Assembly (NCBI RefSeq): GCF_006345805.1
Contig: NC_043001.1
Coordinates: forward strand, 90,644,001-90,708,000
Direction of reading: 5' to 3'
DNA: 64,000 nucleotides
Source of the DNA: Octopus sinensis
Lineage: Eukaryota
Under the pieces are notes generated by a model. That model was not told where the DNA came from. It saw only the letters and a list, made by a program, of their open reading frames with translations, and searched no databases. Made by a program: the position numbers and the translations under genes. Below, in pieces: positions 8,600-49,800 of the stretch (positions within the stretch are counted from its first letter, which is position 1; every line of letters starts with the position of its first letter).

Positions 8600-9266
8600 A
8601 GGCGGTGATCTGGAAGAAACGTTAGCACGCCGGGCGAAATTCCTAGCGGTATTTCGTCTGCCGTTACGTTCTGAGTTTAAATTCCACCGAGGTCGACTTT
8701 GCCTTTCATCCTTTCGGGGTCGATAAATTAAGTACCAGTTACGCACTGGAGTCGATGTAATCGACTTAATCCCTTTGTCTGTCCTTGTTTGTCTCCTCTA
8801 TGTTTAGCCCTTCGTGGGCAATAACGAAATAAGAAACATTAGCACGCCGGGCAATATGCTTAGCGGCGTTTCGTCTGTTTTTACGTTCTGAGTTTAAATT
8901 GCACCGAAATCGACTTTGCCTTTCATCCTTTCGTGGGGTCGATAAATTACCAGTTGCGTAGTGGGGTCGATCTAATTGACTGTCTCCCCAAAAATGTTGA
9001 GCCTTGTGCCTAAAGAAGAAAAGAACATCCACACACACTTACATTTTAAGGGCAGCGAGCTGGCAGAAACGTTAGCACGCCGGGCAAAATGCTTAAGGGT
9101 ATTTCGTCTGTCTTTACGTTTTGAGTTCAAATTCCGCCGAGATCGACTTTGCCTTTTATCCTTTCGAAATCGATAAATTAAGTACCAATTGCATACTGAG
9201 GTCGATCTAATCTACTGAGCTCCTCCCCAAAAATTCCGGGCCTTGTTCCAGGAGTAGAAAAGAATA
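8600..9266 (+). mobile_element. Tandem cluster of three tRNA-derived SINEs (family 1)
   Basis: A-box-like GAGCTGGCAGAA, B-box GAGTTCAAATTCC, central TTTGCCTTTCATCCTTTCGGGGTCGATAAATTAAGTACCAG (resembles the Meta/Sauria-type SINE core as I recall it); many copies in the window. Confidence 0.8.
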
Positions 9267-11299: not shown

Positions 11300-11499
<200 letters not shown>

Positions 11500-12141: not shown

Positions 12142-13086
<945 letters not shown>

Positions 13087-17830: not shown

Positions 17831-18079
17831 TTCTGGGTAATTATCAATCTGGATAATTATTTACTTGGTTACTATTATAGTTTCACTATTACTACTATAA
17901 TCCCTATCTTGTTATTTACTTGTTCACTACAATAGTTTCACAATTATCACTATACTTATATCATTACTATAAGGCTTAGAGGTCCTAATATTATCTCCCC
18001 TGATTTCTTTAGGCAACAAATGATGACAGATTTACGGCTGTTGGTTTAGTTACTGATGATGCTGCGGCGCTAAATGGAA

Positions 18080-18465
18080 GAGTGAGCTGGCAGAATCGTT
18101 AGGACGCCGGGCGAAATGCTTAGCGGTATTTCGTCTGCCGTTACGTTCTGAGTTCAAATTCCGCCGAGGTCGAATTTGCCTTTCATCCTTTCGGGGTCGA
18201 TAAATTAAGTACCAGTTACGTACTGGGGTCGATATAATAGACTTAATACCTATGTCTGTCCATGTTTGTCCCCTCTATGTTTAGCCCCTTGTGGGTAATA
18301 AAGAAATAGGTATTTCGTCTGCCGCTACGTTCTGAGTTCAAATTCCGCCGAGGTCGACTTTGCCTTTCATCCTTTCGGGGTCGATTAAATAAGTACCAGT
18401 TACGCACTGGGATCGATATAATCGACTTAATCTGTTTGTCTGTCCTCGTTTATCCCCTCTGTTAT
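18080..18465 (+). mobile_element. SINE family 1 dimer carrying the Tx1-like tail
   Basis: A/B boxes; unit ends GCCCCTTGTGGGTAATAAAGAAAT then restarts at GGTATTTCG. Confidence 0.82.
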
Positions 18466-18651
18466 AAACTTGAAACATACTAGAATATCATAGATTATAT
18501 ATATCAAGTCATTCAATCAGTTCCGTCCAATTTTACCTTTTTTTAGATTTGAATGAAATTTAATAGTATTTTCAAATGTCTAATTCAATTAAAAATTATT
18601 TTTATGCATTTGTGTACGTTTAAACTAATTAAATATTGTTTTACAAAATAA

Positions 18652-19706
18652 TAGACGGTGTCCACAAAGTCTGCGTACATGGGGATTAACACATACTTTT
18701 AAAACAAAACAATTTTATTTAATTATAATGTTAATAAGTAATATTTTCAAAGTGATTTCCATCATTTTCAATGCATAACTTGATGCGCCTTGCAAAATTC
18801 AGGTGAACTTGATTAATAAGTCTACATTGCCATCAATTTCAGCACACTGACTGGTAATGCGTTCTCTCGTGTGTTTTAAATCTAATCTTTTTTGAGTAAA
18901 CTTTCTCTTTCAACATACCCCAGAAAAAGAAATCAAGGGGAGAAAGGTCTGGTGAACGAGGGTACCATTCCATATGCCCCCTTCTTCCAATCCAACGAGG
19001 AAAAGTGTCATTAAGCCAATATCTAACAGTTATGGCAAAATGTGTAGGGGCCCCATCCTGCTGAAACCCATTCGGAAGGCCCTCGCCTAGGCGCTCAATT
19101 TAAGATATTAATTTGTCTCTCAATATGTTTACATAAGTCTTATTCGTTATATGTTCAATGAAGAAGGGTCCTAAAACATGAGCTTTCCACAAACCACACC
19201 ACACCATCACCTTTTTGCTGCCTTACTGTTTGGATGGATCCATCCAATGTAGATTACCTCGAGACCAGTATAGAAGATTCTGTCTGTTGACCTCGAGACC
19301 AGTATAGAAGATTCTGTCTGTTGACCTCACCATTTACATAAAACGTAGATTTGTCACTGAACAACACAAAGTTTTTCGTAAAATTGATACTTTCATCCAA
19401 TTTATCTGAAAACTATTCGCACGTCTACATTCGTCTATCAGGGTTGTCTTCATTTAAGTGATGCAATATCTGTAGGTTGTATCGATGAAACTTTTCCTCA
19501 ACCAGCATTTTGTGGATGGTTGGTTTTGGAACACCGAACACCGTAGATGTCTGACGAAGTGATTTCTTTGGGCTAGCAGAAATTTTAGCCATGACAGCCT
19601 CTTTCGTTTCATCTGCGTGGAAGTTATACTCGGAGATTGGTCAATATAAAGATCGGCAAGAAATAGAACTTTTATCATCAGTCTTTAATTTATTTTCGCC
19701 AGTGGG

Positions 19707-19787
<81 letters not shown>

Positions 19788-19853
19788 GTATATGATACGG
19801 GAATTTTAATGGAGATAACCTGCAGTATATCGTACATTTTTTGTCTCCGTATA
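18652..19853 (-). mobile_element. Degenerate Tc1/mariner transposon
   Basis: Minus strand PRSPDLSPLDFFFWGMLKEKVYSKK (about 18890-18965); degenerate TIRs TA-GACGGTGTCCACAAA / TA-TACGGAGACAAAAAA; internal 34-bp tandem duplication near 19256 and a (TA)n tract. Confidence 0.7.
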
Positions 19854-20013
19854 TGAGCTAAGTATTAATAAAATGTGGTATACTATAAAAATTTCGGATA
19901 TATGTGTCTTAAAACATTCAGACAAGAAAATTCAGATGTAGCACATGAGGTATTATTCCTTACGAATATCCACATATCTATATTAAAAGTTTCACGATAA
20001 AAATATAGAAATA

Positions 20014-20563
20014 TTGGGCTGTCCGGAAAGTTCGTGCCGATTTATAGTAGCTTATATTTCGACTTATTTTAGAACATGTTTGAGTCCATAAAATAGGATT
20101 TCACTACACCTCCATTTAGAGCACAGTTTAAGCTATCTTTTCGTGGAAGAAGGTTTATGTTCCTATAACCTGTGTTAATTCTGTAACCCTTTAAAATAAA
20201 AGATGAGAAAGTTCATTTTCGGCACTTGATGCTTTGGGAACCAGACAAAAATTGCTGCAGCTCGGCTGGGATGTGTTACCAAAGATATTGTTCCTTCGGA
20301 TTTCCACTTATTCAGGTCTCTGAAGAATAGTCTTAATGGTGAACATTTCAATTCCTAAGATGACGTAAAAAGATACCTTGATGAATTCTTTGCCTTGAAA
20401 TCACTCCAATTCTGGGAAGAGGGTATTTTTAAGGTAAAGGAAAGATGGAGACGTATAGTGAAATGAAATGTTTCAGATTTGGTTCATTAAAAATGTAATG
20501 GCAAGTATTTAGTGACCTTTTACTTTCCTTTAAAAATTGGAACGAACTTTCCGGACAACCCAA
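20014..20563 (+). mobile_element. Internally deleted mariner
   Basis: TIRs TTGGGYTGTCCGGAAAGTTCGT with TA duplication; transposase C-terminus DIVPSDFHLFRSLKNSLNG...FWEEGIFK..ERW. Confidence 0.85.
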
Positions 20564-20627
20564 TATAAACATAACAATGAAATACGAATATAAACATGAG
20601 AAATAAAAACCTAAATTGTAAGAGGCG

Positions 20628-21987
20628 ATTAACCCATGATACTTTTCTTGTTTTCCTTATTATTTCGTTCATTTCAGGGCAGTCCCTGTATATTACTAAT
20701 GTTCCATAAAATTGGTGTCCCCATTTCGAAACTGTGGTTTCTGTTGAGTGTTCCCTTGTCTTCCTTTTAGGGCTGATTACTTCTTTATTCTCTTCCCTTG
20801 GTTTCTCCCTTTCTCTCTTCTTTCTTTCCATATTTTCTTTTTCTTTCGGTATATTGTTTTTTTCCTTTCTCCTGTCTCTGTTCTTTCTTGAGCTCATTTT
20901 CTGCTGTTTCTCTACTTTGTTTCTTTTGTTCTTTTCCTGATGTTTCTTTTTCCTTGTTTTCTTTCTCTTTCAGTGCATTGTTTTTTTTCCATTCTCCTGT
21001 TCTTTTTTTTCCTCTCTCTGTTCTTCTTCTGTAGTTTCTCCGCTCTGTGTCTTATTTTGTTCCTTTTCTGTTGTTTCTTTCTCCACTGTAAATTCATATA
21101 ATGGGCATTCTGCCCTTATATGACCTCTTGTTCCACATAAGTAACAATTCGGCCTTCTTCCCTCTGCAATTACGCCAATTGTCCTTCCATTTTCCACCTC
21201 TATCTGAAAGGGAATTCGCTCGATATTTTCTATTGTGGCCATCAACCACAACTCCACACCGAATCCCTTCCAGTTCACGACATTGGTTTCTGTGATCGGC
21301 CCAAGTTCTATTTCATCTTCAGCCGACCCTAGAATGGCTGTCACCAGCCATTCTGTCTTTATCTCCGGCGGTACGTTTGAGATCTTAACCCTTACTCCTC
21401 GTCTACCTTTGTATGTAGGTAGCATTATAAAATTTTCCGCTCTGAGTACAGTGGAAGAAGGCGAGGCTGCCTCTTCACTTGTTGCACACCTCACTTCCAC
21501 CGTACCATATTTCTTCCCTCTGCTTACATACGTCGCTTTGTCCATTATGTCACCAAGACACTTTTCTATATCTTCTATCGATATTCGCATTAGTTTCCTT
21601 GAGTTCTTGTCCTGTGTCCTGTATATTATCATTTTGTTGTCTCTCTCCTCCGTTGTTTCTGCTGGAGGGATCAGCTTGACGCTTTCACCCTCCCTTTTTA
21701 CATATTTCTCATACTCCTTCATTTCTTCCCTCTTGAAAGTTGCGTCTCTTATCACAAGCGATGATCCACTCTTCGTTGCGGCAACCCCCGTATATGTCTC
21801 CATGACTGAGGGTCGACGTTCCTACTATGAAAAGTAACGACAAGCAGCGGCAAGCGCCTCGCGCGATTCGATCCTGTTTCGTCTCTCTCTACAATTTTTC
21901 ACTCTTCTTCACACAAAAATAACATCCGACTGCGGCACTACATGGTGAGTATTCAGTTGGTGAAAGTTCAGTTGTTGAGTATCGATG
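20628..21987 (-). mobile_element. Tx1-array unit A: ORF1-only element, 3'-truncated
   Basis: ORF from 21803: RRM-like VKISNVPPEI, CCHC CYLCGTRGHIRAEC, K/E-rich tail continuing in the 20520-20897 frame; paralogous to unit C. Confidence 0.8.
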
Positions 21988-21989
21988 AT

Positions 21990-23716
21990 GATTTTTTATT
22001 ACCCACAAGGGGCCAACAAAGAAGGGACAATACAAATCGGGGAACTTAAAAATAACAAAAGTGGATGAAAATAAGACGAAGACAAATTAAAAAATAATGA
22101 ATTATGAAGATATTACAATGAGGTGCAATGTCCACTCGATCCCCGAAATCGAGTGGTTACATTTTTGTCAGTCTCTCCCATATTGATTTTTTCAAAAATT
22201 TTACACAATTCACAAAGTTTATCGCACAAAAATTTCATAGAGTTTCAAAATACCTTTTGCTAACAGAATTTTCGGGGGTTTTTTCCTTCTTTTCCACAAA
22301 TTTAAGTGTATTCTATCTCGTGCACCAGTGTGTCGTATCTCTCCATGCGAGATGGACGCACTTTCAATCGACACTTCCATTGATCCACCACGTACTTCCC
22401 GGTGACCTCCATGTGTTAGCTGGAAGGGGTTGGGGAATTTTTTGCTGTTGTTCATGTGTGCTTGTAGTTTTTCTTTTTGTTTGGGGAGGGGAGTCCGGGG
22501 TGCTTTCTTTTTTACGCTTGTACGTTACCGTTACGTATTCCACCTGTTCGTCTTCCTTTTGTTTTTTCTCGTCTTCTTTTTCTGTTCTTCATTCTTTCTT
22601 CCGCTTTCTTTTTTCTCCTCCTTCTGTTTTCCAATTTGTTTTTTCTTTCCGTCTTCATCGCTCTCCTGCCTCACAGCAGTTTTTTGGGGGGGAGGGGGGG
22701 ACTTCAACTGCTGTTGTTTTTTTTTGGTACAAGTAGAGCAAACGTGGCCCTTCTGCCCACACTTAAAGCATCTGGGCCTACGTCCCTCTACCGACTCACG
22801 AATTGTGTGTCCCTCCCCTACGTCGATCCTGTCGGGCAAACTTTCAAGGGTTTGGTTGTCCCCTTGAACAACCATCTCCAAACTCTGACCCTTCCAGTTC
22901 GTCTCCTCTTTCATCCTCATGCTTAGTATTAATACCTTAGCTTCCACGTCGTACACGACTGCTGTTGCTGCCCACATCACATCATAACCGGCCGGTATGT
23001 CCTCAACTGTGATTTTAGCGGTTCGCCGCCCTAAATAAGTCGGTAACAACATAATTTCCTCATTTTTGAGAGTCCTCGTGGATATCTCCTTTGCTACGTT
23101 AGCCGACCCGAACTGTGCTTCAACTGTAGCACTTCGCACACCTCGGCTAACGTAGCGTACTCTGTTCCAGATGGGAGCCATGCATCGCTCCACCACTTCG
23201 TTCTTCACCTCTGCAATTCTCTTCTCCTTGATGTTGAATACCTTGCATACGACAGTTTTCTCTCGTATAGCCTGGACAGTTTCCTGGGGAGGTACCAGCT
23301 TAGTCTCTTCGCCATTTTTTACAATGTATTGTCTGAACTGGAAGAGCTTGTCCATTGCTACTTCCAGTTCGATAACTTTGCCACCTACTGCAGCTGAAAA
23401 GCTTGGTTTGTCCTTGTTGACCGTTTCGTTTCCGATATTTTTAATTGTTCCCATCTCGGGAAAATCCTTTTTTGACGCAAGGTCACACTCCATCGTATCC
23501 AAAAAATAAATAACCTTGTCGCAACTGACAAGAAATAATTATAAATGCAGGAATTTTCTGCCCCATAGGGCGAAAATTACTGTATGTCGTGAGACAACAG
23601 TTCAAAAACAAATACACAGTAAACACAAACTGGGACGAACTCACAATAACAAATAAGCAGCAACGAGGTACACGCGCAGTCGAGAATAAAGCAACCGGAG
23701 CCTAAGGGTATCGATG
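21990..23716 (-). mobile_element. Tx1-array unit B: ORF1-only element
   Basis: ORF from 23502: LLPTYLGRR, VEGRRPRCFKCGQKGHVCSTC; no ORF2; ends in the shared tail plus AATAAA. Confidence 0.82.
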
Positions 23717-23724
23717 AATAAGTG

Positions 23725-25723
23725 AATTTTTTATTACCCACAAGGGGCCAACAAAGATGGGACAATACAATCGGGAAAAATAAAAAAAGACGAAGACAAA
23801 TTTTAAAAATAATGAATTATGAAAGGATGTACAAATGCGGTGTCATGCCCACTCGATCCCCGAAATCGGGTGGTTACATTTCGTCAGTTCTGTTCACAGG
23901 GTTTCAAAATACATTTCACCAAAAATACATTTCACAAAATTTTCAAAATACATTTTCATAAAAAACATTTTACAGAATTTTAAAATACTTTTCACCAAAT
24001 TTCAAAATACATTTCACAAAGTTTTCAAAATACATTTTCAAAAAACATTTTACAGAATTTCAAAGTACATTTCAAAACTACATTTCGTTTAACAAGGTTT
24101 TTCTTTTCTAATTCTTTTTTTCCCATAATTTTAGATAAATTCCATTACCTCTACCGGATCATGGTAATACTCCATTGTACGTGGAAATTTTACCAGTCGG
24201 CACCTCGCGTGATTTACCACGTTCTTACCGGAGGTCTCGACGAACGCATCGGCGCTGTCTTCATGGATTAGTGCACCCGTTTCCTCCCACTTAGTACCCA
24301 TCTTAACCCATGAATATCCTTCTGTTCTGTCTATTAATTCCTCCATTTCCTCACTACACTTGTGTTGGACCAATGTTCCATAGAATTTATACCGCCTATT
24401 CAATCCTGTGTTTTCTCTTGTCTTCCTTTTAGGACTTATTTCTTCTTTACTCTCCTCTCTTGGTTTCTCTCTTTCTCTCTTTTTGCTTTCCTTTTTTTCT
24501 TTTTCTTTCTCTTGTCTTTTTAGTTCTTTGTCTGTTGTCTCTCTACCTTGTGCCTTATGTTCTTTTCCTGTTTTTTCTCTTTCCTTCAGTGTACTATCCT
24601 TTCCTTTCTCTTGGCTCTGTTTTGGTTCTTTTTCTATTGCTTCTCTACCCTGTGAATTTTGTTCTTTTTCTGTTAAATTTTTCCCTTTGTTTTCATTCTC
24701 CTTCAGTGTACTGTCATTTCCTTTCTCTTGTCGTTTTACCGTTATTTCTTTTTCCTTGTTTTCTTTCTCCTTTAGTGCACTGTTTTTTCCTTCGTGTTCT
24801 TTTTTCTCCTCTTTTTTGTTTTCTTCTGTTGTCTCTCCACTCTGTGTCTTATTTCGTTTCATTTCTTTCTCCACTGTGAATTCGTATAGTGGACACTCTG
24901 TTCTTATATGCCTTCTTGTTCCGCATAAGTAGCAGTTTGGCTTTCTTCCCTCTACAATTACGCCAATTGTTTTTTTCATTTTCTACTTCTATCTGAAAGG
25001 GAATTCGTTCTATATCTTCTATTGTGGCCATCAGCCACAACTCCACACCGAATCCCTCCCAGTTTACGACGTTGGTCTCTGTGATCGACCCTACTTCCAT
25101 TTCCTCTTTAGCCGACCCTAGAATGGCTGTCACCAGCCATTCCGTCTTTACTTCCGGCGGCACGTTTGGGATTTTAACCCGTACTCCTATTTTTCCTTTG
25201 TATGTAGGCCACATACTAAAATTCTCTGCTCTGAGTACAGTGGAAGATAGCGAGGCCGCCTCTTCTCTTGTTGCGCACCTCACTTCCACCGTACCATATT
25301 TCTTCCCTCTGCTCACATATGTTGCTTTGTTCATTATTTCACCGAGACACTTTTCTATCTCTTCTATCGCTATTCTCATTAGCTTCCTCGTGTTCTTGTC
25401 TTGTGTCCTGTAAATTATTGTCTCTCTCCTCCATTGTTTCAGCAGGAGGGATCAGCTTAACGCTTTCACCCTCCCTTTTAACGTATTTCTCATATTCCTT
25501 TAATTGTTCTTTCTTGAATGTTACTTCTCTTATTACAAGCGACGCATCACTCTTCGTTGCGGCAACACCCGCGTAAGTCTCCATGACTGAGGGTCGACGC
25601 TCCTTCTATAAAAGTACTTACACGCAGCGACAAGCGCCTCGCGCGATTCTGTCCTGCTTCGTCTCCTTCTACAATTTTCCTCTTTCACACAATAATAACG
25701 TCTGACTCTAAAGAGTATCGATG
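23725..25723 (-). mobile_element. Tx1-array unit C: ORF1-only element
   Basis: ORF1 25584 to 24131 (2 frameshifts), CYLCGTRRHIRTEC; AT-rich tandem repeats 23900-24090 in the 3' UTR; shared tail. Confidence 0.82.
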
Positions 25724-25725
25724 TA

Positions 25726-28700
25726 TTTCTTTATTACCTATAAAAGGCTACATAGTGGGGGACAGAACAATCACTAATGATTTTACAATTATGATGCATT
25801 TTGGGATCGATAAAAATTTGGATGATAGTTATACAGTTTCGAATGATAGTACATATACATTGGACAATTTTTAGAAATGGAGTGGGGCAGGTCTACGGAT
25901 CCCACGAACCCCGCCACGACACTTGGTCTTACGTTTTTTTTTCTTTTTTTTTCTCCGTCCTATCTCGTATTTATGAGGGACCTTTTACTCACGACATTTT
26001 TCCTTTCATTGAACACTTTCTTACTCAGGCTCCTCCTCTCTAGTTCTATTTGTCTTTTCATGTGGAATTTAAAAAAGACCACCAGACTAGAACCAGAGAT
26101 GAAGTCGCCTGTTATCATCCCTATCATCCTTGTCTTCCATACTACTTGTTTCGCAGTTGAAACTACAGAAAGAAAACAATTCTTACCTTCTTTCGTTAAG
26201 AAATCCGGTGGTCTGATTTTTACAATTGATTCAGCTGACAGCTGTACTCCTCCTCCATCTGACAACAGCTGTTCGGCAAAAACCCACATATCTGCCACCT
26301 CCGAACACTGTACGATCGCGTGCGAGACGGTTTCCTTGTCTCGCCCACACCTGGGACAGGTCGGGCTGACTTGGTATCCATGCCTTGCGAGTTTGTCCCG
26401 AACAGGTAAGGCACCTCGGTAACACTGCCAAGCCAAGGACTTCTGAAAATTATCCAGGGTCCCCGGCCCAAATGTACGTTGGAACAGACTGGCCAGCTGA
26501 TTATCGTCGAAACCTAGGGTCTCCCCTAGCGTATCATGGCAACCGGCCTCTACAAACCCTCTATAGAAAATAGCGGTAGAACCACTGCCGCAGGCATTGC
26601 CCGAGCGGCGGAATAGGCGGAGTGCCTTGCGACACTCCGTATACCATGAACCCAACTTCGATCTACGATTATACCAGTCTTCCCGTCCACCGAAACTGGT
26701 GAACCTGGGGAACATCTGTTTCGCCAGCGGAGACCACACCCGTTCACCATCCAGATGGATCCACATTAGCCACGGCATCCCTAGTCCACCCTTTAACGGT
26801 TTTTGACAACAAATAGAGTGTCTCACAAGTGGATTCGAGCCCTTCCACAAGAAGAGGAAGAGCTGTCTTTCCAACCTGGTCAACCATGAATCCGGGCGAG
26901 GCACGACGGCAAGGCGGTGGGTGATCACCGATGCGATAAACACATTGGCTACCTCCGTCCTACCTTTCAGGGATAACCACCGCCAAGACCAGGTCTTGAC
27001 TACTGCGGCCACCCTGCTCGATACTTCGCTCCAGTTCTTCTCTATTTGGAGGTCTGGTCCAAACCAAACCCCGAGCAACTTAATCGGACCCTCCGTCCAA
27101 CGTCCCAACTTTTGCTCCTGTCACCGTCTCGTAAACCTCTATGGCCTTGCCTACTTTACGTAGGAGGTCCACTTCGGTCATGATGATAGTAATGTCATCC
27201 GCGTACGCCGAAACCGACATTCCACGACCTGGCTGCCTCGGGATGCCGCTCAGTTTTCGCAGCAGCGGCTCAAGAGCCACTACATACATAAGCGGGGAGA
27301 GCGGACATCCCTGACGAACCGAGCATTTGACCTTGAACGGCTTAGAAAGAAAGCCGTTCACCCGAACTACCGAGTCGATGTTGTCGTACATTTCGATGAT
27401 CCACCTGAGGAAGCCAAGACCCAGGCCGAACTGAGCCAGAACGGACACCAGGTAGTGATGGTCGACCCTATCGAAAGCTTTTGATTGGTCTAAATGGACC
27501 ACTGCCCCTCCCTTGCGGGGATCGTTATTAATTCCCTCTATAGTGTATCTAATGAGATGGAGATTATCCTGAATGGACCTGCCCGGTACGGCACACGTTT
27601 GTGCTTTCCCAATCAGTCCACTCGCGACACGCGCCAATCTGTTCGATAACACTTGGGCCAAAATCTTCAGCTCTGCGTTAAGCAGAGTGATGGGCCTAAA
27701 ATTATCAATGACATCCCCCTTACTCGGGTCCTTCCTGACTAGTGTCACCACTCCCCGACGCACAGATCTGGGAATAAACCCATTCTGTTGCCAGTTCGCG
27801 TAGACGTTCGCCAGTAAGTCCCCGAACAAGTCCGGCATACTCTTGTAAAGCTCGTAGAGTAGACCATCCAGTCCCGGTGCCTTACCTGCACCGCAGTCAG
27901 CCATGGCCTCTATCACTTCAAAACCAGCCTCTTGACCTTCACCTGGGCCTCAGTGCCAGTTCGTATTGCTTCCTCTAAGTCCTTGACTAGTGTTGATTCC
28001 TTTCTAGCCTCTCTAGCTACAAGATCTATACTATACCTAATAGACTCGTATCGGATGGCTCGCTTGAGGGCATACCACCATTTGTTGTTAATAATGGATC
28101 CGGTCATGGCCCTCTGAATAATTAACCTAATCCTGTCACTGTACTCCTTAATCGCCAAGAGGGACGTATTAAGTTTCCAGTAACCAGAACCTCTATTTGT
28201 CTTATCTATGTCTAGCCTACAGGTGACTATCTTGTGGTCACTGTAGCTGACCATGTGGAGCTGTGGACTCTTAGCTAGGTTTCTATCTACCTTTCTAATT
28301 AATATCCTGTCTAAGTATGACTTGGAAGATCCGCCGTCTCTTGACCATGTCCACAATGGCACGTTCGGATGTTCCAGCCTATATGGATCTACCAGCTCAA
28401 AACGTCTTAGTAGATCCAGGAAGCAAGCATTTCCTTTCCTATCTGTACGCGAGCCTTCACAGTCTACCCGCGCATCGCATACTGTGTTGAAGTCTCCTAA
28501 CATTACTAAAGGATGCGTTGTACTCGGAAAATTACCGAGGTTACGAAAATAATCACTTTGCCCTTTGTTTTCGTTGGGTGCGTAAATCGCACCCAGGCTG
28601 ATTGTCTTACGACTACTGAACGTCAAATCAACGACGACCAGCCTACCCTCTGGATCTGCAAAAATCAACTTTTTCTCAGAAACCCGGTTCTTTTTACACA

Positions 28701-30690
28701 GGACCAACACCCCGCTTCCGCCGGACGACGGGTTCGGAGAGATAATTCTCTCGTAACCGTCGAACAGCGGGAGCAGATCTCTTGGCCCCTTTAACCGGGT
28801 TTCTGTGGCAACAACAACATCTAAATCTCGTGACCTGATGTCATTTAGGAGGCGCCCTTGCTTCCAGTTCGACATCAGGCCACGCACATTTATACACCCT
28901 ACACAAATACGAGACATTTCTTACCTTTTTAAAAAGTGTTCTTTATATCCCTGTTGGTCGTGGGGGGGAAGTCCGCCTTAAAAAATAACTCGTGCAGGTC
29001 GAGTCGCGGACCCCTGACATCCCCCGAGTACTGCGCACTTATGATATTGTAGTTTAACATGTCCATCTTGTATACTTCCACGTTTTTTGGCAGTTTTTTA
29101 AAGGTCTGCACTTTTTCTGCAGTTGGTATGTTTTCCATTTCGCTCTTTAGTCTATCGTTTTCTTTGTTTATTGCGGCGAAATCTGTCTGGAACTCGGTAA
29201 TTTTGGGGGGGCTTTGTGGGGGTGATGGGGAGGACAGCGGAGAGTATGATGGGGGGGGAGCACTGGGATATGTTTGGGAGGGGAGAGTATTGCTCGGCAC
29301 TGAGGGGTGGGGGTGGTTCGGGTTGGACTGGGGGGTCTTTTCTTTTTTACCTTTTTGTGGGGAACCGTGGTTGGGTGGGGTAGGTTTCCACCCTGGGTGT
29401 TAGTCTTCTTTGTATATGGAATGGGTGGGTTTGAATCACTATTTTTCCTTTTTTTCTTTTGCCTCGGTGTTATGAAGGCATCTTCCTCTTCCTGTTTCTT
29501 CTCTTCTTTTGTCTCTGTGTTCTTCTTCTTCGCCTCTTCTTCGGCTTTTTTCCTCTTCCTCTTTCTTGCGGGTGGGGCATTCCGCTCGGATGTGGCCCTT
29601 TTCGCCACACCCGTAGTATCTTGGCTTTCGCCCTTCTACCACCACCCGCAAGTTTATTTCTTCATCGAAGTTTATGTTTTCTGGCACCTCCTCTAGAGTT
29701 TCTGGGGCCGCCTGCACTAGTATCTGTAGTGTTTGGCCTCTCCAGTTCTCTTTTTGCATGTTTACTATGTTTAAAATGTTTATTTTATTTTCTAGCCCTA
29801 TTAATAGGGCTGGAATGAGGCACTTCACCTCAATTTCAGGGGTAATTTCTTCAATTCTTATTTTTGATGTCCTTCGTCCCATATACGAAGGTAGGAGAAT
29901 TATTTCCGTTGTTTTTATGGGGTAAATAGAATGCTTTTTTGCCTGCTCTTCTTTGAAATATACTGTTATTGTAGCATACTTCTTGCCCCATGTTACATAG
30001 TCTATGTCTCTCCATATCGGCTGGAGACATTTTTCAGCTTGTTCCTTTGTAACTTTATCAATTTTTTTCTCTTTTATAATAAAAGATTTGTATATCACTG
30101 TTCTTCTCAATGTGCTGTTTTTAATCTCTTTTGGGAGGGTGGCCTTTACGCTGTTCCCCTCCCTTGTAAACATTGCTTTGTATTTATCAAATTCTATGTC
30201 TTCTACTTTTATTTCTTCAGATTTCCTGCCGGCTGTGGCTGCAAAGTTGTACATCTTTTTTTCTTTCTCGGTTTCACCCGCAGGTGAACTATCACATACT
30301 GTTTTTGGTTTGGACGCATCCATTTCTTTTTTAGACTGTATGGTTTTCTTTGTAGGTGAACCTACAATGGTTTCCCTTGAAGGTGAACCTTCGTCGGTTA
30401 CATCTTCATACATCCTTTCGGAAGAAAGAACGTTTTCTTTATTCATTTCAGCAAAAATGAGTGGGGGGTTGGGTGGGGGGGTTCTATGCTACAAAGCACA
30501 CTTTCCCTTCCTTATAGGAGGGGACTAACAATATTTTCCTGGTCAAACACCAGGTGAATAACAGTTCAATTAACAATTTTTAAAAAGAGTTTAACACCAC
30601 TTCAATATCCAAAAACAGATAAACATTTACTTACAAGCAATATAACATATGACAAAATCCAGTGTTACTGAGTTCTAAAGAGTATCGATG
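25726..30690 (-). mobile_element. Tx1-array unit D: L1/Tx1-clade LINE with ORF1 and ORF2
   Basis: ORF1 30446 to 28929 (frameshifted; ..GCGEKGHIRAEC); ORF2 starts 12 nt later. Confidence 0.92.
25960..28917 (-). pseudogene. ORF2 of unit D: AP endonuclease, reverse transcriptase, C-terminal Zn finger (frameshifts, apparent EN-RT linker deletion)
   Basis: CINVRG, ATET, LGDFN, SYLDRIL, SDH (EN); KAPGLDG, RPITLLN, DQSKAFDRV, RQGCPLSP, YADD (RT); CPRC..KETVSHAIVQC. Confidence 0.92.
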
Positions 30691-30691
30691 A

Positions 30692-32362
30692 TTTCTTTAT
30701 TACCCACTAGGGGCGACATAGAGGGGACACTACAAGACATTGGGGACATAGAACATTATAAAATAAAAGTATGTGAGATGAAATTTTGCAAATGATAATA
30801 TGAAAGTGATGCTAACGGCCCAATCCGCCAGCACCACTTACCTGTCCTTCATAACCCATCGTCATTTATCATCTTCAATCAAAAGCCCATATGTCTTTAT
30901 CATTCTCTCAGTCTTCCTTTCAATCTCTTTCACCGTCTCGTCCGCAAATGTTACCTTAATCACTTTCACACCCTCATTTACACACTTCGCCATAATTCCC
31001 TCCATTTGTTCCCTAGGCCCCACCGCATAACTCCCTTCTGCTCTCTCATACCATGAATAATTGTTTATTATGTCTTTCGAATCCTCAGTGTCCTCTCTTT
31101 TTACGAAACATAAAATATGGGGCTGGGATCTTGTTTACTTTGTGTGTCTGCGTTGTTTTTTGGTTTTCTTGTAGGCGGGGAATGGGTGGAATCACTGTTT
31201 GTAGGGGAAGGATGGGACTCAGAGGGTGCGGGTGGTGTTGGGGTGGGTTGGGGTTCACCATAATTCGATTTTCTTCTCTTTTTTCTCTTCTTTCTTGCAT
31301 CTTCCCATTTAGTCTGAGCTTCCTCCTCCTCGGTTCTTCCTCCTCAACTTGTTTTTGCTCCACCTCCTCCTTTTCCTGGTTCACAGTTTCCTTTTGTGGG
31401 GGAGGGCAGTTATCTCTTATGTGGCCCCTCAGGCCACACTTATAGCATCTTGGTGCTCTGCCCTCCACCCATACTCTCATTACAATATTTCCCATGTTTA
31501 CGTTGTCGGTCATTCTTTCGAGTGTACCCTCCTCCGCTTGTACACTCATTTCAAGCGTCTTACCTCGCCAGCCTTCACTCTTTACGGTAGCCTGCAAGAT
31601 GTCTACCTACTCTTCGACTTCTTTTATTACCGCTGCAACAACCCATTCACCTTCTATGTGGGCGGGGGGTTATCTCTTCCACTCTTATTCTTGTGGTTCT
31701 CTTGTTCATATATGTTGGTAATAAGATTACCTTTTCTGTTTTGATCGCCTTTGCTGCCATTTTTCTCGCCATATTCTTACTTCCAAACTGCACCATTATC
31801 GTTCCGTACTCACTACCTCTCGCCACAAATACAATTTCTTCTTCCACTCTCCTTAACGCCTCCTCAATATCTTCCATTTTTATCATCTCCACTCTCTTGT
31901 TATCATTTACATATGTCCGGTACTTAATAAATCTTTTCTCAAACCATTCACTACGTTTTTCTGGTGGTAATAGTTTTACCTCTCCTCCTTCCTTCATCAT
32001 ATATGCCTGAAAGCCTGGCAACTTTTCCAGGTCTCTCTCCTTTTCTTCTGTCTTCCTTGCTGCTCCATCATACGTCTTACCGACCTTTACATCCATTTTA
32101 TTGACGGCACCAATTAGCTCGTCCTCGGAGGTCGATGCCTCCGATATACTCTCGAATAGCCTTTCTTCTGCCGTCTCTCCCATTAGGGAGGGGCGGTCCA
32201 TCACTTTTTGTCTGTCTCAATACAGACAGACAACGGCCGACAGACCGAAAACAGTGTAACAAAGTCGTATAACAAAACGTATAATTCAACAGCAAATAAT
32301 TGGCAACTTACAATAAAGTCTAAAAGAGAGAGTTTTTGAGTATCCTCTAAAGAGTATCGATG
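30692..32362 (-). mobile_element. Tx1-array unit E: ORF1-only element
   Basis: ORF1 32204 to about 31085 (frameshifted): LLPTYMNKR, VEGRAPRCYKCGLRGHIRDNC; shared tail. Confidence 0.82.
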
Positions 32363-32363
32363 A

Positions 32364-32527
32364 TTTCTTTATTACCCACTAGGGGCGACATAGAGGGGAC
32401 ACTACAAGACATTGGGGACATAGAACATTCTAAAATAAAAGTAAGATGAAATTTTGCAAATGATAATATGAAAGTGATGCTAACGGCCCCATCCGCCAGC
32501 ACCACTTACTTGTCCTTCATAACCCAT
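32364..32527 (-). mobile_element. Tx1-array unit F: 5'-truncated 3' end of the unit-E family
   Basis: Nearly identical to 30692-30859. Confidence 0.85.
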
Positions 32528-32819: not shown

Positions 32820-32861
<42 letters not shown>

Positions 32862-32958
32862 CGGGAAGCTTTATGAAAATAAACAAAAGACGAAGGCAGG
32901 TGGAAAACAAACGAACAATTGTATTAGTATGGCGCTCAGGAAATATAAATAAAACAAG

Positions 32959-32996
32959 TCTTTAACGTTTCGAGCCTACGCTCTTCAACAGAAAGA
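32959..32996 (-). ncRNA. Minimal hammerhead ribozyme motif (PLE repeat 1)
   Basis: UCUUU-CUGUUGA-A-GAGC-GUAG-GCUC-GAAA-CGUU-AAAGA: stems I and II form, palindromic ACGU stem III, A6U core variant. Confidence 0.7.
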
Positions 32997-44752: not shown

Positions 44753-44774
44753 TTTATTATTATCATTATTATCA

Positions 44775-45375
44775 TGGCGACGAGGTAACAGAATCGTTAG
44801 CACGCCGGGCGGACGAAAAGCTTAGCAACATTTCGTCTGTCTTTATGTTCTAAGTTCAAATTCCGCCTAGAGCGACTTCGCCTTTCATCCTTTCGGTGTC
44901 GATAAATTAAGCACCAGTGAAACACTGCGGTCGATGTAATCGACTTAATCCGTTTGTCTGTCCTTGTTTGTCCCTTCTGTATTTAGCGTCTTGTGGGTAG
45001 TAAAGAAATAGGTATTTCGTATGCCGTTACGTTCTGAGTTCAAATTCCGCCGAGGTCGACTTTGCCTTTCATCCTTTCGGGGTCGATAAATTAAGTACCA
45101 GTTACGCACTGGGGTCGTTATAATCGTCTTAATCCGTTTATCTGTCCTTGTTTGTCCTCTCTGTGTTTAGTCCCTTGTGGGCAGTAAAGAAATAGGTATT
45201 TTGTCCGTCCTTACGTTCTGAGTTTAAATTCCGCCGTGGTCGACTTTGTCTTTCATCCTTTTGAGGTTGATAAAATAAGTACTAGTCAAGCACTGGGGTC
45301 GATGTAATCGACTAACCCCTCCTCCAAAATTTCAGGCCTTCTGTCTAAAATAGAAAGGATTACTATTATTATTAT
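44775..45375 (+). mobile_element. SINE family 1 trimer
   Basis: Three bodies, two Tx1-like tails, final end GGCCTTCTG...AAAGGATTACTATTATT. Confidence 0.82.
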
Positions 45376-45616
45376 TATACACACTGTGAAGTATATATTA
45401 TACCTATTGTATTATACTTTAGGTTTTCGAAGTGTTCCTGTTTTTGATAAATTGAAGTTTTTTACCGATGTGTGTTTAGTTAACTTAATACTACACCAGC
45501 TAGGCTTCGACATGAAATACTAACGAGATGATAGTCTGGGTTATAATTATCTCCTCAACTTTTAATATAATATAATATGTGTGTGTACATATATATACAT
45601 GTAATATACATGTAGA

Positions 45617-46853: not shown

Positions 46854-49800
46854 GTAAGTTAAACATAATTCTTTAACTTTCCATGTACGTGTCGAAATTA
46901 TCAACATTTCTTTCTTAATATTTTGCACATTGAAAGCAGCGAGTTGGCAGAATCGTTAGTACTCTGGGCAAAATGCTTAGCGACATTCTGTCCTTCTTTA
47001 TGTTCTGAGCTCGAATCACACGGAGGCTTATTTTGCCTTTCATCCTTTCGGCGTCGATAGAATAAGTACCACTTCAACAATGTGGTCGATGTAACCGACT
47101 TAACCGCTCTTCCGAAATTGCTGGCCTTGTGCCAAAATTTGAAACCAGTATTATTCTACTGTTAGGCCGCGAGCTGGCAGAATCACCACCGTACTTGGCT
47201 AAATACTAAGCAGCTTTCTCAAATTTCGTCCGTTTTTACGTTCTGAGTTCAAATCCCGCACATGTCAACTTTCATCCTTTCCAGGTCGATAAACACCGAG
47301 GTCTATCCAATCTACTTGCCACCTCCCCTGAAATTGCTGGCCTTGTGCCAAAATTTGAAATCAATATTTTGCACACTGAAGGCAGCGAGTTGACAGAATC
47401 GTAAGCACGCGGCGAGCTGGCAGAATCGTTAGCACGCCGGGCGAAATGCTTAGCGGTAATTCCGCTGCCGCTACGTTCTGAATTCAAATTTCGCCGAGGT
47501 CGACTTTGCCTTTCATCCTTTCGGGGTCGATTAAATAAGTACCAGTAACGCACTGGGGTCGATATAATCGACTTAATCCGTTTGGCTGTCCTTGTTCGTC
47601 CCCTCTGTGTTTAGCTCCTTGTGAGTAGTAAAGAAATAGGTATTTCGCCTGCACCTACGTTCTGAGTTTAAATTATGCCGAGGTCGACATTGCCTTTCAT
47701 CCTTTCGGGGTCGATAAATTAAGTACCAGTTACGCACTGGGGTCGATGTAATCGACTTAATCACTTTGTCTGTCCTTGTTTGTCCCCTCTTGTGGGCAAT
47801 AAAGAAATAAGAATCTTAAGCACGTCGGGCAAAATGCTTAGTGGTATTTCGTCCGCCTTTACATACGGAGTTCAAATTCCACCGAGGTTGACTTTGCTTT
47901 TCATGCTTTCGACGTCAATAAAATAAGTTCTAATTGAAAACTGGGGTCGATATAATCAACTTATCCATGAAATTGCTGCCTTGTGCCAACATTTGAAACT
48001 AATACTTTGCACATTGCAGGTCAGCGAATTGGCATAATCTTTAGTGTCTGATAAAATACCATCGATATTTCTTCTGGTTCTTAACTTTCTGAGTTAAGTC
48101 CCAATTAACCTTGCATTTCGTCATTTCGAAATCGATAAAAGAACTGGGAATGGCTGTACAAACGAAACCCTTCCCTCAAAATTCTGGTGTAGTTCCTTTA
48201 TTAGAAATCATTAAATTGTAAATGCTAGAAATAAGGATTTGCACATTTCTATTGCTTTGTCTTCTCAATTCATACTTGATGAAATTTTTAAATGTCTTAA
48301 ATCTAAATATGACCGAAAATATATTTCTATTTTTGTTGTTTATTTTAGTTCTGGCTTTGCGGACACATCGCAGAAGGTATTAAATATTTCCCTTTTATAT
48401 ATTATAATTGTCATATTGTTATTTGATATGCAAGCAATAAGAAGAGGGACCAGTTAGTTTGGCTAAATATTGACATGTAAATTTCTCAAAATATACTACA
48501 TAAAGAGGTGTTTTGGTCAGAGTGTGTCATGTTTGAATCCGTTAAATCTAAAACTATGACTGCTATTATAGTAAAGAAAGAAATCACTATTCACTCCGCT
48601 AAGCTGACTTTAACATAGATGTTATACTTCATTGCTCACATTTTCGAATCACAAATATATCATCGAAGTTCTGATACAAAACTATATCGCTTGGTAACAG
48701 TAACGAGCTGCATGTACAGTTATATAAGATATAAGTACAATGGGACCTGAATGAAACGCGTCGACCAAAGATTATTTGTTCCACAGAATATCATTCGAGA
48801 CACAACTAGTAATGAAGAGAAATCTCTATTGATATGAACCACACAGGCAGTACTAAATATCTGAAGTTGTCCCAAACTTCTTACGGTCTCGATCTAAGTA
48901 AATGCATACATTACAGTGAATTGTTTTGATAGAGCACAAAGCAGTTATTGCTCTAATCTTGCTTTGGAAATGATATTTAGATATTTTACAAACAAAAGAA
49001 GTACATATATTTTAAACTACGGTGCGTATCAGAATAGTTATCAATCATTTGAGATTCATATTAAGGAATTCTTTGAGTTTTTTTTTTTAAGAGTCATAAA
49101 AGACAACTACTGTTCTACAGGATAATTCTATTTTAGTTCAAATGTAGAACTTATTGCGTGTTTGTAACACAAAAATATGCAAACTTTGACTGACAGAGAA
49201 AATAAAAATTGCCTCAATGTAAGATTTGCAGATGAAATTGTATGTAAAGGATATTACTCAAATATATTTACACACGTAAACTCATTTCTGCACTTAACAA
49301 ATGGCATCCTTGAAATCTCATTCGAATTATCTGCCATCAGGATTCTGCAGAGTTTAAGATTATGCTGATAACGTTCACTGAGTAATTTATAACTATGTTT
49401 ATGGAAGCAGAGACAAAGGTTCTAAATATACCCTAAATTGAGTGAATAATAAATTACAGTGATTATAAAATTCCTTTCTTATATTGCTAAAAGAACAAAA
49501 AAAGTGAAAAAACAGGAGGGTTCAGATATGTAACTAGATACTTCATTGTATTAGATGTGGCAGTCTACACCTTCAGCCACTTCAACAATATTTAGATAAA
49601 AGATAATACTAATTATATTTTTTATTTCTAACCATTTCAGGTAATTTAATCCGTAAGAGTGTGGAAACACTAACAGAAGATGAAGTTCTCAACCTACAGG
49701 TAGCTCTCCGTGCCATGCAGGATGATGCATCTCCAACTGGTTACCAGGCCATCGCAGCCTACCATGGTGAGCCAGCTGACTGTAAGGCACCAGATGGAAG

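What the first reader, a model, noticed from the sequence alone, without database searches (positions are those of the whole stretch)
18250..32400. An abundant SINE shares its 3' tail with the Tx1 array, including a stem-loop with a compensatory change
Seen: SINE tail TGTCCCCTCTATGTTTAGCCCCTTGTGGGTAATAAAGAAAT (18250-18307; also about 8775, 44950, 45135, 47578, 47762) aligns with unit E/F ends TGTCCCCTCTATGT--CGCCCCTAGTGGGTAATAAAGAAAT and unit B TGTCCCTTCTTTGTTGGCCCCTTGTGGGTAATAAA. All can form G-CCC[5-nt loop]GGG-T (a few SINE copies are mutated). LINE D has G-CCT[TTTAT]AGG-T, a C-G to T-A covariation. Known: SINEs share 3' tails with stringent LINE partners such as CR1, L2 and RTE, whereas mammalian L1 recognises only poly(A). 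Inference: this L1/Tx1 lineage uses stringent 3' stem-loop recognition and mobilises both the SINE and the half-elements.
Basis: partly seen in the sequence, partly recalled or inferred. Interest (0 to 1): 0.82.

Follow-up and report, generated by a model that had tools for sequence, protein, structure and literature searches.

The report
SINE and Tx1-like LINE share hairpin tail
A short octopod retroposon (SINE) ends in the same ~42 bases, including a tiny conserved RNA hairpin, as a neighbouring family of L1/Tx1-type LINE elements, so the LINE's enzyme most likely copies the SINE by recognising that hairpin; this is a textbook mechanism, but we found no published report of it for an animal L1/Tx1-type LINE.

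Summary
The window holds six SINE 3' ends (+ strand) and five LINE-unit 3' ends (- strand, 21989-32408) that share a ~42-45 nt tail. None is expected by chance.

The similarity is confined to the tail. Among LINE units whose ORF1 proteins are only 25-45% identical, the tail is the only alignable 3'UTR segment.

The tail contains a 4-bp stem with a 5-nt loop (CUUGU), placed directly before AAUAAAGAAAU. Related loci from Octopus vulgaris, O. sinensis, Argonauta hians and two unnamed assemblies give much more:
- In ten SINE/LINE lineages, 40 of 40 stem positions pair.
- All four pairs show double (compensatory) changes.
- The Argonauta SINE and LINE share a species-specific C-G to G-C swap.

Intact 1132-1133-aa ORF2 LINEs in O. 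vulgaris and O. sinensis carry the SINE's exact hairpin. SINE copies end precisely, have no poly(A), and two show target-site duplications.

Best reading: a stringent-type SINE/LINE partnership on an L1-superfamily, probably Tx1, LINE. It also serves ORF1-only derivatives.

The mechanism is well known. The partner clade is unusual: only three L1-clade pairs, all in plants or algae, were catalogued in 2012.

Not tested: function, genome-wide abundance, and formal clade placement.

The parts
18262..18308 (+). Type-1 SINE 3' tail (reference copy). Stem GCCC 18284-18287, loop CTTGT 18288-18292, stem GGGT 18293-18296, then AATAAAGAAAT 18297-18307.
   Evidence: covariance model 57.8 bits
8785..8831 (+). 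Type-1 SINE tail: GCCC[TTCGT]GGGC, stem kept, loop mutated.
44964..45010 (+). Type-1 SINE tail: GCGT[CTTGT]GGGT, one broken pair.
45148..45194 (+). Type-1 SINE tail: GTCC[CTTGT]GGGC, pairs changed but still paired.
47592..47638 (+). Type-1 SINE tail: GCTC[CTTGT]GAGT, second pair changed from C-G to U-A, compensated.
47764..47809 (+). Type-1 SINE tail with the 5' half of the hairpin deleted.
   Evidence: 34.8 bits
18075..18460 (+). SINE multimer: a full type-1 unit plus a unit joined at AGGTATTTCG (184-nt period). The last unit lacks the tail.
   Evidence: (D7, D9)
44770..45380 (+). SINE multimer: a full unit and an internal-junction unit, both with type-1 tails, then a unit with the type-2 tail.
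47381..48000 (+). A type-1 SINE dimer inserted into the head of a type-2-tailed SINE. The 30-nt head fragment lies at 47381-47410 and the remainder starts at 47809. The duplicated target is CAGAATCGTAAGCACGC / AAGAATCTTAAGCACGT (14/17).
8601..9030 (+). A type-1 SINE joined to a type-2-tailed SINE at the same head position. The duplicated AAGAAAC(G/A)TTAGCACGCC (17/18) carries shared rare variants.
25725..30690 (-). LINE unit D, the only full-length unit. ORF1 29439-30446 (CCHC), APE endonuclease 27913-28917, RT 27080-27916, zf-RVT C-terminus 25960-27108. ORF2 is broken by two frameshifts. Tail 25724-25770 with hairpin GCCT[TTTAT]AGGT at 25736-25748.
30691..32362 (-). Unit E: ORF1-only element (ORF1 split into 31647-32204 and 31085-31597). 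Tail 30690-30736, hairpin GCCC[CTAGT]GGGT at 30702-30714.
32363..32527 (-). Unit F: a 165-nt 5'-truncated copy of the E-type 3'UTR. Tail 32362-32408, hairpin at 32374-32386.
23725..25724 (-). Unit C: ORF1-only element (24849-25379 and 24131-24979, frameshifted). Tail 23724-23770, hairpin GCCC[CTTGT]GGGT at 23736-23748, identical to the SINE hairpin.
21990..23724 (-). Unit B: ORF1-only element (ORF1 22531-23502). Tail 21989-22035, hairpin GCCC[CTTGT]GGGT at 22001-22013.
20568..21989 (-). Unit A: ORF1-only element (ORF1 20970-21803). Its 3' part is interrupted by a mariner-type MITE, and no tail is seen.

Best explanation
This is a stringent-type SINE/LINE partnership.

An octopod LINE lineage of the L1 superfamily, probably the Tx1 clade, ends in a ~42-45 nt module. 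The module has a pyrimidine-rich stretch (TGTCCCCTCT), a mini-hairpin with a 4-bp stem and a C-U-U-G-U loop, and an A-rich terminus AAUAAAGAAAU(A). The element has an ORF1 with a CCHC knuckle. Its ORF2 has an APE endonuclease, an RT and a C-terminal CCHC 'zf-RVT' domain.

Proposed mechanism:
1. The ORF2 protein recognises the tail module on RNA.
2. It starts target-primed reverse transcription at a fixed position just 3' of the hairpin. This would explain why copies end precisely and carry no poly(A).
3. A roughly 230-nt SINE with a tRNA-like head, and ORF1-only internally deleted LINE derivatives ('half-elements'), carry the same module and are copied in trans.

What is shown:
- The shared tail.
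- Its confinement to the 3' end.
- Its conservation against a diverged background.
- Covariation of the stem, and co-evolution of SINE and LINE tails between species.
- Intact ORF2 LINEs carrying the same hairpin.
- Precise 3' ends, target-site duplications and 5' truncation.

What is inferred:
- That ORF2p binds the hairpin.
- That the hairpin is required.
- That these LINEs, rather than another clade, supply the enzyme.
For: 1. Tail identity. The motif occurs 10 times against 0 expected. A covariance model built from 25 tails hits only SINE 3' ends and LINE-unit 3' ends in about 200 kb. SINE-LINE BLAST similarity is limited to SINE nt 192-233, at 88-92%.

2. Selective constraint. ORF1s of the five units are 25-45% identical and their 3'UTRs are not alignable between subfamilies. 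The last ~45 nt align in all of them.

3. Structure.
- RNAalifold predicts exactly the 4-bp hairpin.
- It lies in the MFE fold of all 9 tails tested.
- In 30 tails, 94.2% of cells pair against 70% in shuffles, and at most 46% when the partners are slid. All 4 pairs show double changes. The covariation score is 0.644 against 0.224, exceeded by 0 of 500 shuffles.
- In 10 lineage representatives, 40/40 cells pair, 4/4 pairs are compensatory, and 0 of 500 shuffles reach the score.
- Hairpins with the CTTGT loop number 28, against at most 6 for any permutation of the loop.

4. Co-evolution. Argonauta hians LINE and SINE tails both read GGCC[CTTGT]GGCT, where octopus LINE and SINE tails read GCCC[CTTGT]GGGT.

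5. Autonomous partner. L006 (O. vulgaris, ORF2 6058-9456, 1132 aa) and L008 (O. sinensis, ORF2 6107-9508, 1133 aa) have uninterrupted ORF2s that are 75% identical to the window's. Each is followed by a tail with the SINE's hairpin.

6. Retroposition signatures.
- Ends are precise, at GAAAT(A) in the window and GAAATCTAT in Argonauta, with different flanks and no poly(A).
- There are two target-site duplications.
- Unit F and a second Argonauta 3'UTR copy are 5'-truncated.
- Adjacent SINE units are no more alike than units at different loci (82-92%), so the multimers are not recent local duplications.

7. Clade.
- Pfam finds Exo_endo_phos, RVT_1 and zf-RVT above threshold.
- The best solved relative is human L1 ORF2p, at E 3e-48 against 1e-23 for R2.
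- Octopus LINE classes in the literature include L1-Tx1 (PMC13282606).
- In gastropods the L1 superfamily is represented by Tx1 (PMC11203168).
- RRM/CCHC ORF1 variants in non-mammalian animals fit Tx1 (PMC5203782).
Against: - No functional data exist.
- The hairpin is very small. Folding energies of type-1 tails are not clearly better than shuffles (z -0.6 to -1.7 for the four window tails and -2.1 for the Argonauta SINE tail), so the support is comparative, not thermodynamic.
- The only ORF2-bearing unit in the window (D) is dead, with two frameshifts. It has the most divergent hairpin and loop.
- The SINE tail is closest to ORF1-only units and to LINEs from other species.
- Part of the tail alignment was anchored on the loop, and two Argonauta sequences were found by a hairpin scan, so there is some selection bias. 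The 10-lineage test excludes them.
- The sequences are related, so shuffle counts are not probabilities.
- The sample is about 200 kb, not a genome.
- Tx1 placement was not tested phylogenetically.
- Repbase and Dfam could not be searched, so a closer tail in another LINE clade, or a prior database record, cannot be excluded.
Confidence: 0.75

Rival explanations
1. The shared tail is mainly a 3'-end processing or stability module: an AAUAAA polyadenylation signal with an upstream hairpin. It would be kept for transcript formation, and the RT would prime on poly(A) or non-specifically, as in relaxed L1-type mobilisation. This resembles mammalian SINEs that carry AATAAA.
For: AATAAA sits immediately 3' of the hairpin in most type-1 tails. 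Related LINEs also place a hairpin just before AATAAA-like motifs. L1-clade elements are classically poly(A)-dependent (PMC3472496).
Against: Genomic copies carry no poly(A). They stop at a fixed nucleotide 5-10 nt after AAUAAA. A Pol III SINE has no obvious need for a Pol II signal. Several variants lose the exact AATAAA (AATAGAG in the Argonauta SINE, AGTAAAG in window copies) yet keep the hairpin. Type-2 tails keep the hairpin without AATAAA.
Confidence: 0.1
2. The similarity is by descent or recombination only. A SINE fragment was captured at LINE ends, or the reverse, by template switching or gene conversion. The hairpin would have no role, and the SINE would be moved by a different LINE clade.
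For: Template switching that swaps SINE tails is well documented (PMC4824008). The window's SINEs occur in chimeric multimers with two tail types. Octopus genomes hold very active RTE, CR1 and Dong-R4 LINEs (PMC13282606).
Against: The tail is conserved where everything else in the LINE units has diverged. The stem covaries in all four pairs. SINE and LINE changed together in Argonauta relative to Octopus. The same tail ends intact-ORF2 LINEs in two species. No other element type in about 200 kb carries it.
Confidence: 0.07
3. The conserved module acts at the DNA level, as a target or recombination site that nucleates head-to-tail arrays. New copies would land next to existing tails, or arrays would grow by unequal crossing-over. 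It would not be an RNA recognition element.
For: Every related LINE locus fetched is a direct tail-to-head array: the window, L003/L004, L006, L007, L008 and L009/L010. Type-1 SINE tails in the window always abut another SINE unit.
Against: The two resolved SINE insertions lie inside SINE heads and duplicate head sequence, not tail sequence. Seven Argonauta SINE copies end in unrelated flanks. L011 is a solitary LINE with the hairpin. Compensatory stem changes point to a folded single strand rather than a duplex site. Array growth and RNA recognition are also not mutually exclusive.
Confidence: 0.06

Closest known systems
UnaL2 / UnaSINE1 (eel, L2 clade), the experimentally proven stringent pair (PMC1636434 and Kajikawa & Okada 2002 as cited there)
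   Same: SINE and LINE share only the 3' tail. The tail holds a conserved stem-loop with a conserved loop sequence. Copies have no need for poly(A).
   Different: The LINE clade differs (L2 against L1/Tx1). The UnaL2 stem is longer and is followed by a short terminal repeat, whereas here there is a 4-bp stem followed by AAUAAAGAAAU. No assay exists for this system.
LINE1-1_ZM / ZmSINE2-3 (maize, sorghum) and L1-1_CR / SINEX-3_CR (Chlamydomonas), stringent L1-clade pairs (PMC3472496, PMC3747384)
   Same: An L1-superfamily LINE has a conserved 3' end, about 45 nt conserved against a diverged body. It forms a hairpin with compensatory changes and is shared with SINEs.
   Different: Those pairs are from plants and algae. 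Ohshima's 2012 survey catalogued no animal L1-clade pair. The loop and flank motifs differ (UCU loop and CGAG flank, against a CUUGU loop and AAUAAA flank). The maize and Chlamydomonas elements end in poly(A), and these do not.
Tx1-Mar LINEs and SINEU in crocodilians (PMC4494074)
   Same: A Tx1-clade LINE is inferred to mobilise a SINE. The elements pile up next to each other at preferred target sequences.
   Different: That partnership was inferred from shared target sites, and SINEU ends in poly(A) with no shared tail. Here the link is a shared structured tail, and a shared target is not shown.
Human L1 / Alu (relaxed type)
   Same: Among solved structures, the window's composite ORF2 is most similar to human L1 ORF2p. 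Non-autonomous elements use ORF2p in trans.
   Different: Recognition there is through poly(A), and Alu has no L1-derived tail.
Drosophila HeT-A with TART/TAHRE (own knowledge; PMC1636488 for the elements)
   Same: gag/ORF1-only non-autonomous LINE relatives sit in head-to-tail arrays beside RT-encoding relatives.
   Different: Those are telomere-specific, of the Jockey clade and poly(A)-ended. This array lies between two haemocyanin genes.

Membership tests
Stringent-type SINE/LINE pair (shared 3' tail) | SINE-LINE similarity confined to the 3' terminus | tested here: met
   BLAST: only SINE nt 192-233 match LINE units, at 88-92%. Alignment of unit ends.
Stringent-type SINE/LINE pair (shared 3' tail) | Tail conserved among LINE subfamilies that are otherwise diverged | tested here: met
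   ORF1 identity is 25-45%. 3'UTRs are not alignable except for the last ~45 nt.
Stringent-type SINE/LINE pair (shared 3' tail) | Stem-loop in the tail supported by compensatory substitutions | tested here: met
   all 4 pairs show double changes, with 94-100% of cells paired against 66-70% in shuffles.
Stringent-type SINE/LINE pair (shared 3' tail) | Precise 3' ends without a poly(A) requirement | tested here: met
   All copies end at GAAAT(A) or GAAATCTAT before unrelated sequence.
Stringent-type SINE/LINE pair (shared 3' tail) | Tail or hairpin required for retrotransposition by the partner's ORF2p | not testable with these tools
   Needs a cell-based retrotransposition or RNA-binding assay.
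tRNA-derived SINE | [quoted passage not shown] | tested here: inconclusive
   ARAGORN finds no tRNA and Rfam finds nothing. Box-like motifs TGGCAGAATCG and GAGTTCAAATTCC are visible by eye.
tRNA-derived SINE | Short, non-coding, multiple dispersed copies with target-site duplications | tested here: met
   Units of about 230 nt at four loci in the window, with homologues in Argonauta and O. sinensis. Duplications of 14/17 and 17/18.
L1 superfamily LINE | ORF2 with an N-terminal APE endonuclease, RT and a C-terminal CCHC (zf-RVT) domain | tested here: met
   Pfam Exo_endo_phos 2e-14, RVT_1 1e-27, zf-RVT 3e-10, all above the gathering score. The best PDB match is L1 ORF2p at 3e-48.
Tx1 clade | RT phylogeny grouping with reference Tx1 elements | not tested
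   No reference LINE library (Repbase/RTclass1) was available, and hits carry no clade names. Indirect support comes from the literature: PMC13282606, PMC11203168.
Tx1 clade | ORF1 of the RRM/CCHC type | tested here: inconclusive
   zf-CCHC scores 21.4 bits in unit A, against a cut-off of 20.8, and falls below the cut-off in D and E. The CCHC motif is conserved in the alignment. The RRM was not tested. The link to Tx1 comes from PMC5203782.
Tx1 clade | Target-sequence-specific insertion (typical, not universal) | tested here: inconclusive
   Two SINE insertions lie at the same nucleotide of SINE heads. The AGGTATTTCG junction recurs four times. Tail-to-head arrays occur at every related locus. 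No common target shared by LINE and SINE was shown.

The most novel reading that the evidence does not exclude
An animal L1/Tx1-type LINE lineage has kept, since before Argonauta and Octopus diverged, a minimal 3' recognition hairpin with a 4-bp covarying stem and an invariant CUUGU loop. Several LINE subfamilies, ORF1-only derivatives and at least two SINE tail families would share it. The window's second SINE tail, ...CCCCnAAAnnnnnGGC[CTTGT]GCC..., resembles the tail of a 40%-identical LINE in other assemblies. Under this reading, the lineage rather than RTE or CR1 would be a main engine of the octopus-specific SINE expansion. Its endonuclease would direct SINEs into the tRNA-like heads of existing SINEs, producing the multimers.
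Probability: 0.3. Interest if true: 0.65.

Novelty: new member of a known kind. Interest (0 to 1): 0.5.

Why it matters
SINEs make up about 11-12% of the O. vulgaris genome and most are unclassified, so their LINE partners are essentially unassigned (PMC13282606).

A SINE tied by a structured tail to an L1-Tx1 LINE would identify one driver of the octopus SINE expansion. It would also add an animal example to the very short list of stringent L1-clade elements: three pairs, all plant or algal, in the 2012 survey (PMC3472496).

That bears on whether stringent 3' recognition is ancestral in the L1 superfamily and was relaxed independently in mammals and flowering plants.

The hairpin is small, with an invariant loop and a freely covarying stem. 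Intact ORF2 copies exist in two species. The claim can therefore be tested directly with standard retrotransposition and RNA-binding assays.

Tried and rejected
- ARAGORN and Rfam on the window and on a SINE cluster found no tRNA or known RNA family.
It is an octopod by its relatives.
- I tried to name the LINE clade from database annotations. Cluster names were uninformative, such as 'hypothetical protein' and 'reverse transcriptase domain-containing'.
- An extended lower stem, in which UCU.UGUU pairs with AAUA.AGA, appears in single-sequence MFE folds. RNAalifold does not recover it, so it is not claimed.
- I considered CATCGATACTC(TTTAG), which follows each LINE tail, as a pure target-site duplication. 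Against this, L006 and unit A show the motif is part of a conserved 5' region. For it, unit E carries a second GATACTCAAAAAC just after the motif, and the 16 nt are identical between very diverged units. This is unresolved.
- I considered local tandem duplication as the source of the 184-nt SINE period. It is rejected as a recent event because adjacent units are 84-91% identical, no closer than units at different loci.
- BLAST does not detect the link between the type-2 SINE tail and the L003/L011 LINE tail. The resemblance is a motif of about 25 nt seen by eye and is suggestive only.
- Literature searches found no report of an octopus SINE/Tx1 tail pair. Repbase and Dfam cannot be searched here.

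Full report
**What is in the window**

The window is eukaryotic and octopod-like. The nearest named relatives of its proteins come from Argonauta hians, Octopus vulgaris, O. sinensis and O. bimaculoides. Both ends encode haemocyanin functional units.

Between them, on the minus strand from about 20.6 to 32.5 kb, lies a head-to-tail array of six LINE-related units.
- Unit D (25725-30690) is full length. It has an ORF1 with a CCHC knuckle, an APE endonuclease, an RT and a C-terminal zf-RVT domain. Its ORF2 is broken by two frameshifts.
- Units A, B, C and E hold only an ORF1.
- Unit F is a 165-nt 5'-truncated 3'UTR.

On the plus strand, four clusters hold copies of a roughly 230-nt SINE: about 8.6, 18.1, 44.8 and 47.4 kb.

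**Checking the observation**

The 17-mer GTGGGTAATAAAGAAAT, allowing up to 2 mismatches, occurs 10 times against none in shuffles. Six sites are at SINE 3' ends and four are at LINE-unit ends. Unit B adds a fifth LINE tail.

BLAST of the whole SINE against all fetched loci matches LINE units only over SINE nt 192-233, at 88-92% identity.

The ORF1 proteins of the array units are only 25-45% identical, and their 3'UTRs cannot be aligned between subfamilies. The last ~45 nt nevertheless align in all five. This is the classical signature of a functionally constrained LINE tail shared with a SINE.

**The hairpin**

The tail contains G-C-C-C [C-T-T-G-T] G-G-G-T directly before AATAAAGAAAT.

I fetched related loci:
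- Argonauta hians (L002).
- O. vulgaris (L006, L007).
- O. sinensis (L008).
- Two unnamed ENA assemblies with LINEs 40% identical in ORF2 (L003/L004, L009/L010, L011).
- A TARA scaffold (L005).

The stem differs between lineages but always pairs:

| Lineage | Hairpin |
|---|---|
| Octopus SINE and LINE units B/C, L006-L008 | GCCC/GGGT |
| Argonauta LINE and SINE | GGCC/GGCT |
| A second Argonauta SINE tail | GGCC/GGCC |
| The window's second SINE tail type | TGGC/GCCA |
| L003/L011 LINE | AGGC/GCCT |
| L009 LINE | TGGC[CATGT]GCCA |
| Unit D | GCCT[TTTAT]AGGT |

Individual SINE copies add GCTC/GAGT and GTCC/GGGC.

Quantitatively:
- On 30 tails, 94.2% of cells pair against 70% in shuffles and at most 46% with slid partners. 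All four pairs have double changes. The covariation score is 0.644 against 0.224, reached by 0 of 500 shuffles.
- On ten lineage representatives, none chosen by a hairpin scan, 40/40 cells pair against 66%, and all four pairs are compensatory.
- RNAalifold on 25 type-1 tails predicts this hairpin and nothing else.
- RNAfold places it in the MFE fold of all nine tails tested. The energies of the type-1 tails are unremarkable against shuffles. The case therefore rests on comparison, not thermodynamics.
- Hairpins with the CTTGT loop are 28 in all the sequence held, against at most 6 for any permutation of the loop.

**Co-evolution and an autonomous partner**

In Argonauta both the LINE 3'UTR (L002 12604-12650) and the SINE copies carry the G-C variant of the third pair. 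In octopus both carry C-G. The Argonauta and octopus SINE bodies are homologous, at 70-74% over nt 93-233.

tblastn with the window's ORF2 showed that L006 and L008 contain LINE copies at 73-79% identity. Each has an uninterrupted ORF2 of 1132 or 1133 aa (L006 6058-9456, L008 6107-9508). About 210 nt after the stop, each has a tail with GCCC[CTTGT]GGGT, the SINE's exact hairpin.

This fills the gap left by the window, where the only ORF2-bearing unit is dead and has a variant hairpin.

**Signs of retroposition**

- All type-1 tails stop at GAAAT(A). All Argonauta tails stop at GAAATCTAT and are followed by unrelated sequence. None has poly(A).
- At 47381 a 30-nt SINE head fragment is followed by a complete type-1 SINE. 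The interrupted SINE resumes at 47809 with a 17-nt overlap (14/17) that shares a rare TAAGCAC variant.
- At 8610/8831 the same head position is duplicated (17/18), with shared rare variants.
- Unit F and a second Argonauta 3'UTR copy are 5'-truncated.
- Adjacent SINE units are no more similar than units at different loci.

**Clade**

ORF2 has Exo_endo_phos, RVT_1 and zf-RVT above Pfam thresholds. Its best solved relative is human L1 ORF2p, at 3e-48 against 1e-23 for R2. That places it in the L1 superfamily.

Tx1 is the expected sub-clade for three reasons from the literature:
- Octopus LINE classes include L1-Tx1 (PMC13282606, PMC8967140).
- In gastropods the L1 superfamily is represented by Tx1 (PMC11203168).
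- CCHC/RRM ORF1 variants in non-mammalian animals fit Tx1 (PMC5203782).

No phylogeny against reference elements could be run, and annotations were uninformative.

**Comparison with what is known**

SINE/LINE tail sharing with a stem-loop is textbook for the L2, CR1 and RTE clades (PMC1636434, PMC4176376, PMC4824008).

[quoted passage not shown] All three were in maize or Chlamydomonas (PMC3472496, PMC3747384).

For Tx1, crocodilian SINEU was linked to Tx1-Mar by shared target sites, not by tails (PMC4494074).

I found no paper describing a cephalopod SINE/Tx1 tail pair. Repbase and Dfam could not be searched.

The finding is therefore a new member of a known kind, in an unusual clade.

**Verdict**

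Function, genome-wide abundance and formal clade placement remain untested.

The most likely mechanism is stringent recognition of the hairpin-plus-A-rich tail by ORF2p, with reverse transcription starting at a fixed site. SINEs and ORF1-only derivatives would be trans-mobilised in this way (confidence about 0.75).

Interest is moderate (0.5). The mechanism would not surprise a specialist. The clade, the very small covarying hairpin and the link to the octopus SINE expansion are worth following up.

Noticed in passing
window 8981-9030, 9216-9290, 45313-45380, 47100-47150, 47320-47372, 47961-48000, 62440-62520: A second SINE tail type reads ...CCCCnAAAnnnnnTGGC[CTTGT]GCCAAAATTTGAAAyCAATATT. It has the same loop and a covarying stem. 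Its C-rich tract plus hairpin resemble the 3' end of LINEs that are 40% identical in ORF2 from unnamed assemblies (L003 10120-10185, L011 9100-9165). The likeness is a ~25-nt motif that BLAST does not detect.
   Followed up: partly
window 8601-9030, 18075-18460, 44770-45380, 47381-48000: Type-1 SINE tails never meet unique flank. Each is joined to another SINE unit, either at AGGTATTTCG (four times, giving a 184-nt period) or at AAGAAnC near the SINE 5' end (twice, with 17-18-nt target duplications). In three of the four multimers the 3'-most unit has the type-2 tail. This suggests sequence-specific insertion into SINE heads. Template switching is not excluded for the internal junction.
   Followed up: partly
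window 21989-32408 (-); L003/L004, L006, L007, L008, L009/L010: Six of the eight distinct LINE loci fetched (L003/L004 and L009/L010 each counted once), plus the window, are direct tail-to-head arrays. Periods are about 6820, 6484, 5280, 3574 and 1780 bp. The other two loci, L001 and L005, are short contigs that each hold a single copy. The window array mixes subfamilies. L011 is a solitary copy. In the window each tail is followed by CATCGATACTC(TTTAG). Whether this is a conserved 5' end or a regenerated target duplication is unresolved.
   Followed up: partly
L003 10150-10185, L011 9125-9165, L009 9068-9110, L005 4775-4800: More distant LINE relatives have a second, longer hairpin between the CUUGU-type hairpin and the terminal AAAUAAA. 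It shows compensatory differences (CCTGT/ACAGG against CTGTG/CGCAG). L005 has a different 6-bp hairpin just before AATAAAG.
   Followed up: partly
window 510-6857 and 49661-61651 (+): There are two tandem haemocyanin gene segments. Each ORF of about 420-460 aa is one functional unit (Tyrosinase plus Haemocyan_bet_s). Stretches are 92-100% identical between the two copies, so the transposon array sits between recently duplicated haemocyanin genes.
   Followed up: partly
window 20020-20567 and about 18800-19650 (-): A mariner-type MITE with terminal inverted repeats (ggttgtccggaaagttcgt...) interrupts LINE unit A. A decayed mariner-like transposase remnant lies just downstream.
   Followed up: no
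window 32854-33153 and 37351-37650; 33180-33750 and 37687-38130: A direct repeat about 4.5 kb apart is 100% identical. It has strong G/C strand skew, GT/GTAT-rich and purine-rich low-complexity blocks, and long minus-strand ORFs (33499-36786) with no Pfam match. It may be a recent duplication or an assembly artefact.
   Followed up: no
window 11266-12937: A large block of trinucleotide microsatellites (ATT/ATC/GCA/GTA), arranged partly as a long inverted repeat.
   Followed up: no
window 40293-41108 (+): An ORF has weak RT-like similarity to the LINE ORF2 (28% over 100 aa, E 2e-4) and no Pfam hit. It is probably a remnant of another retroelement.
   Followed up: no
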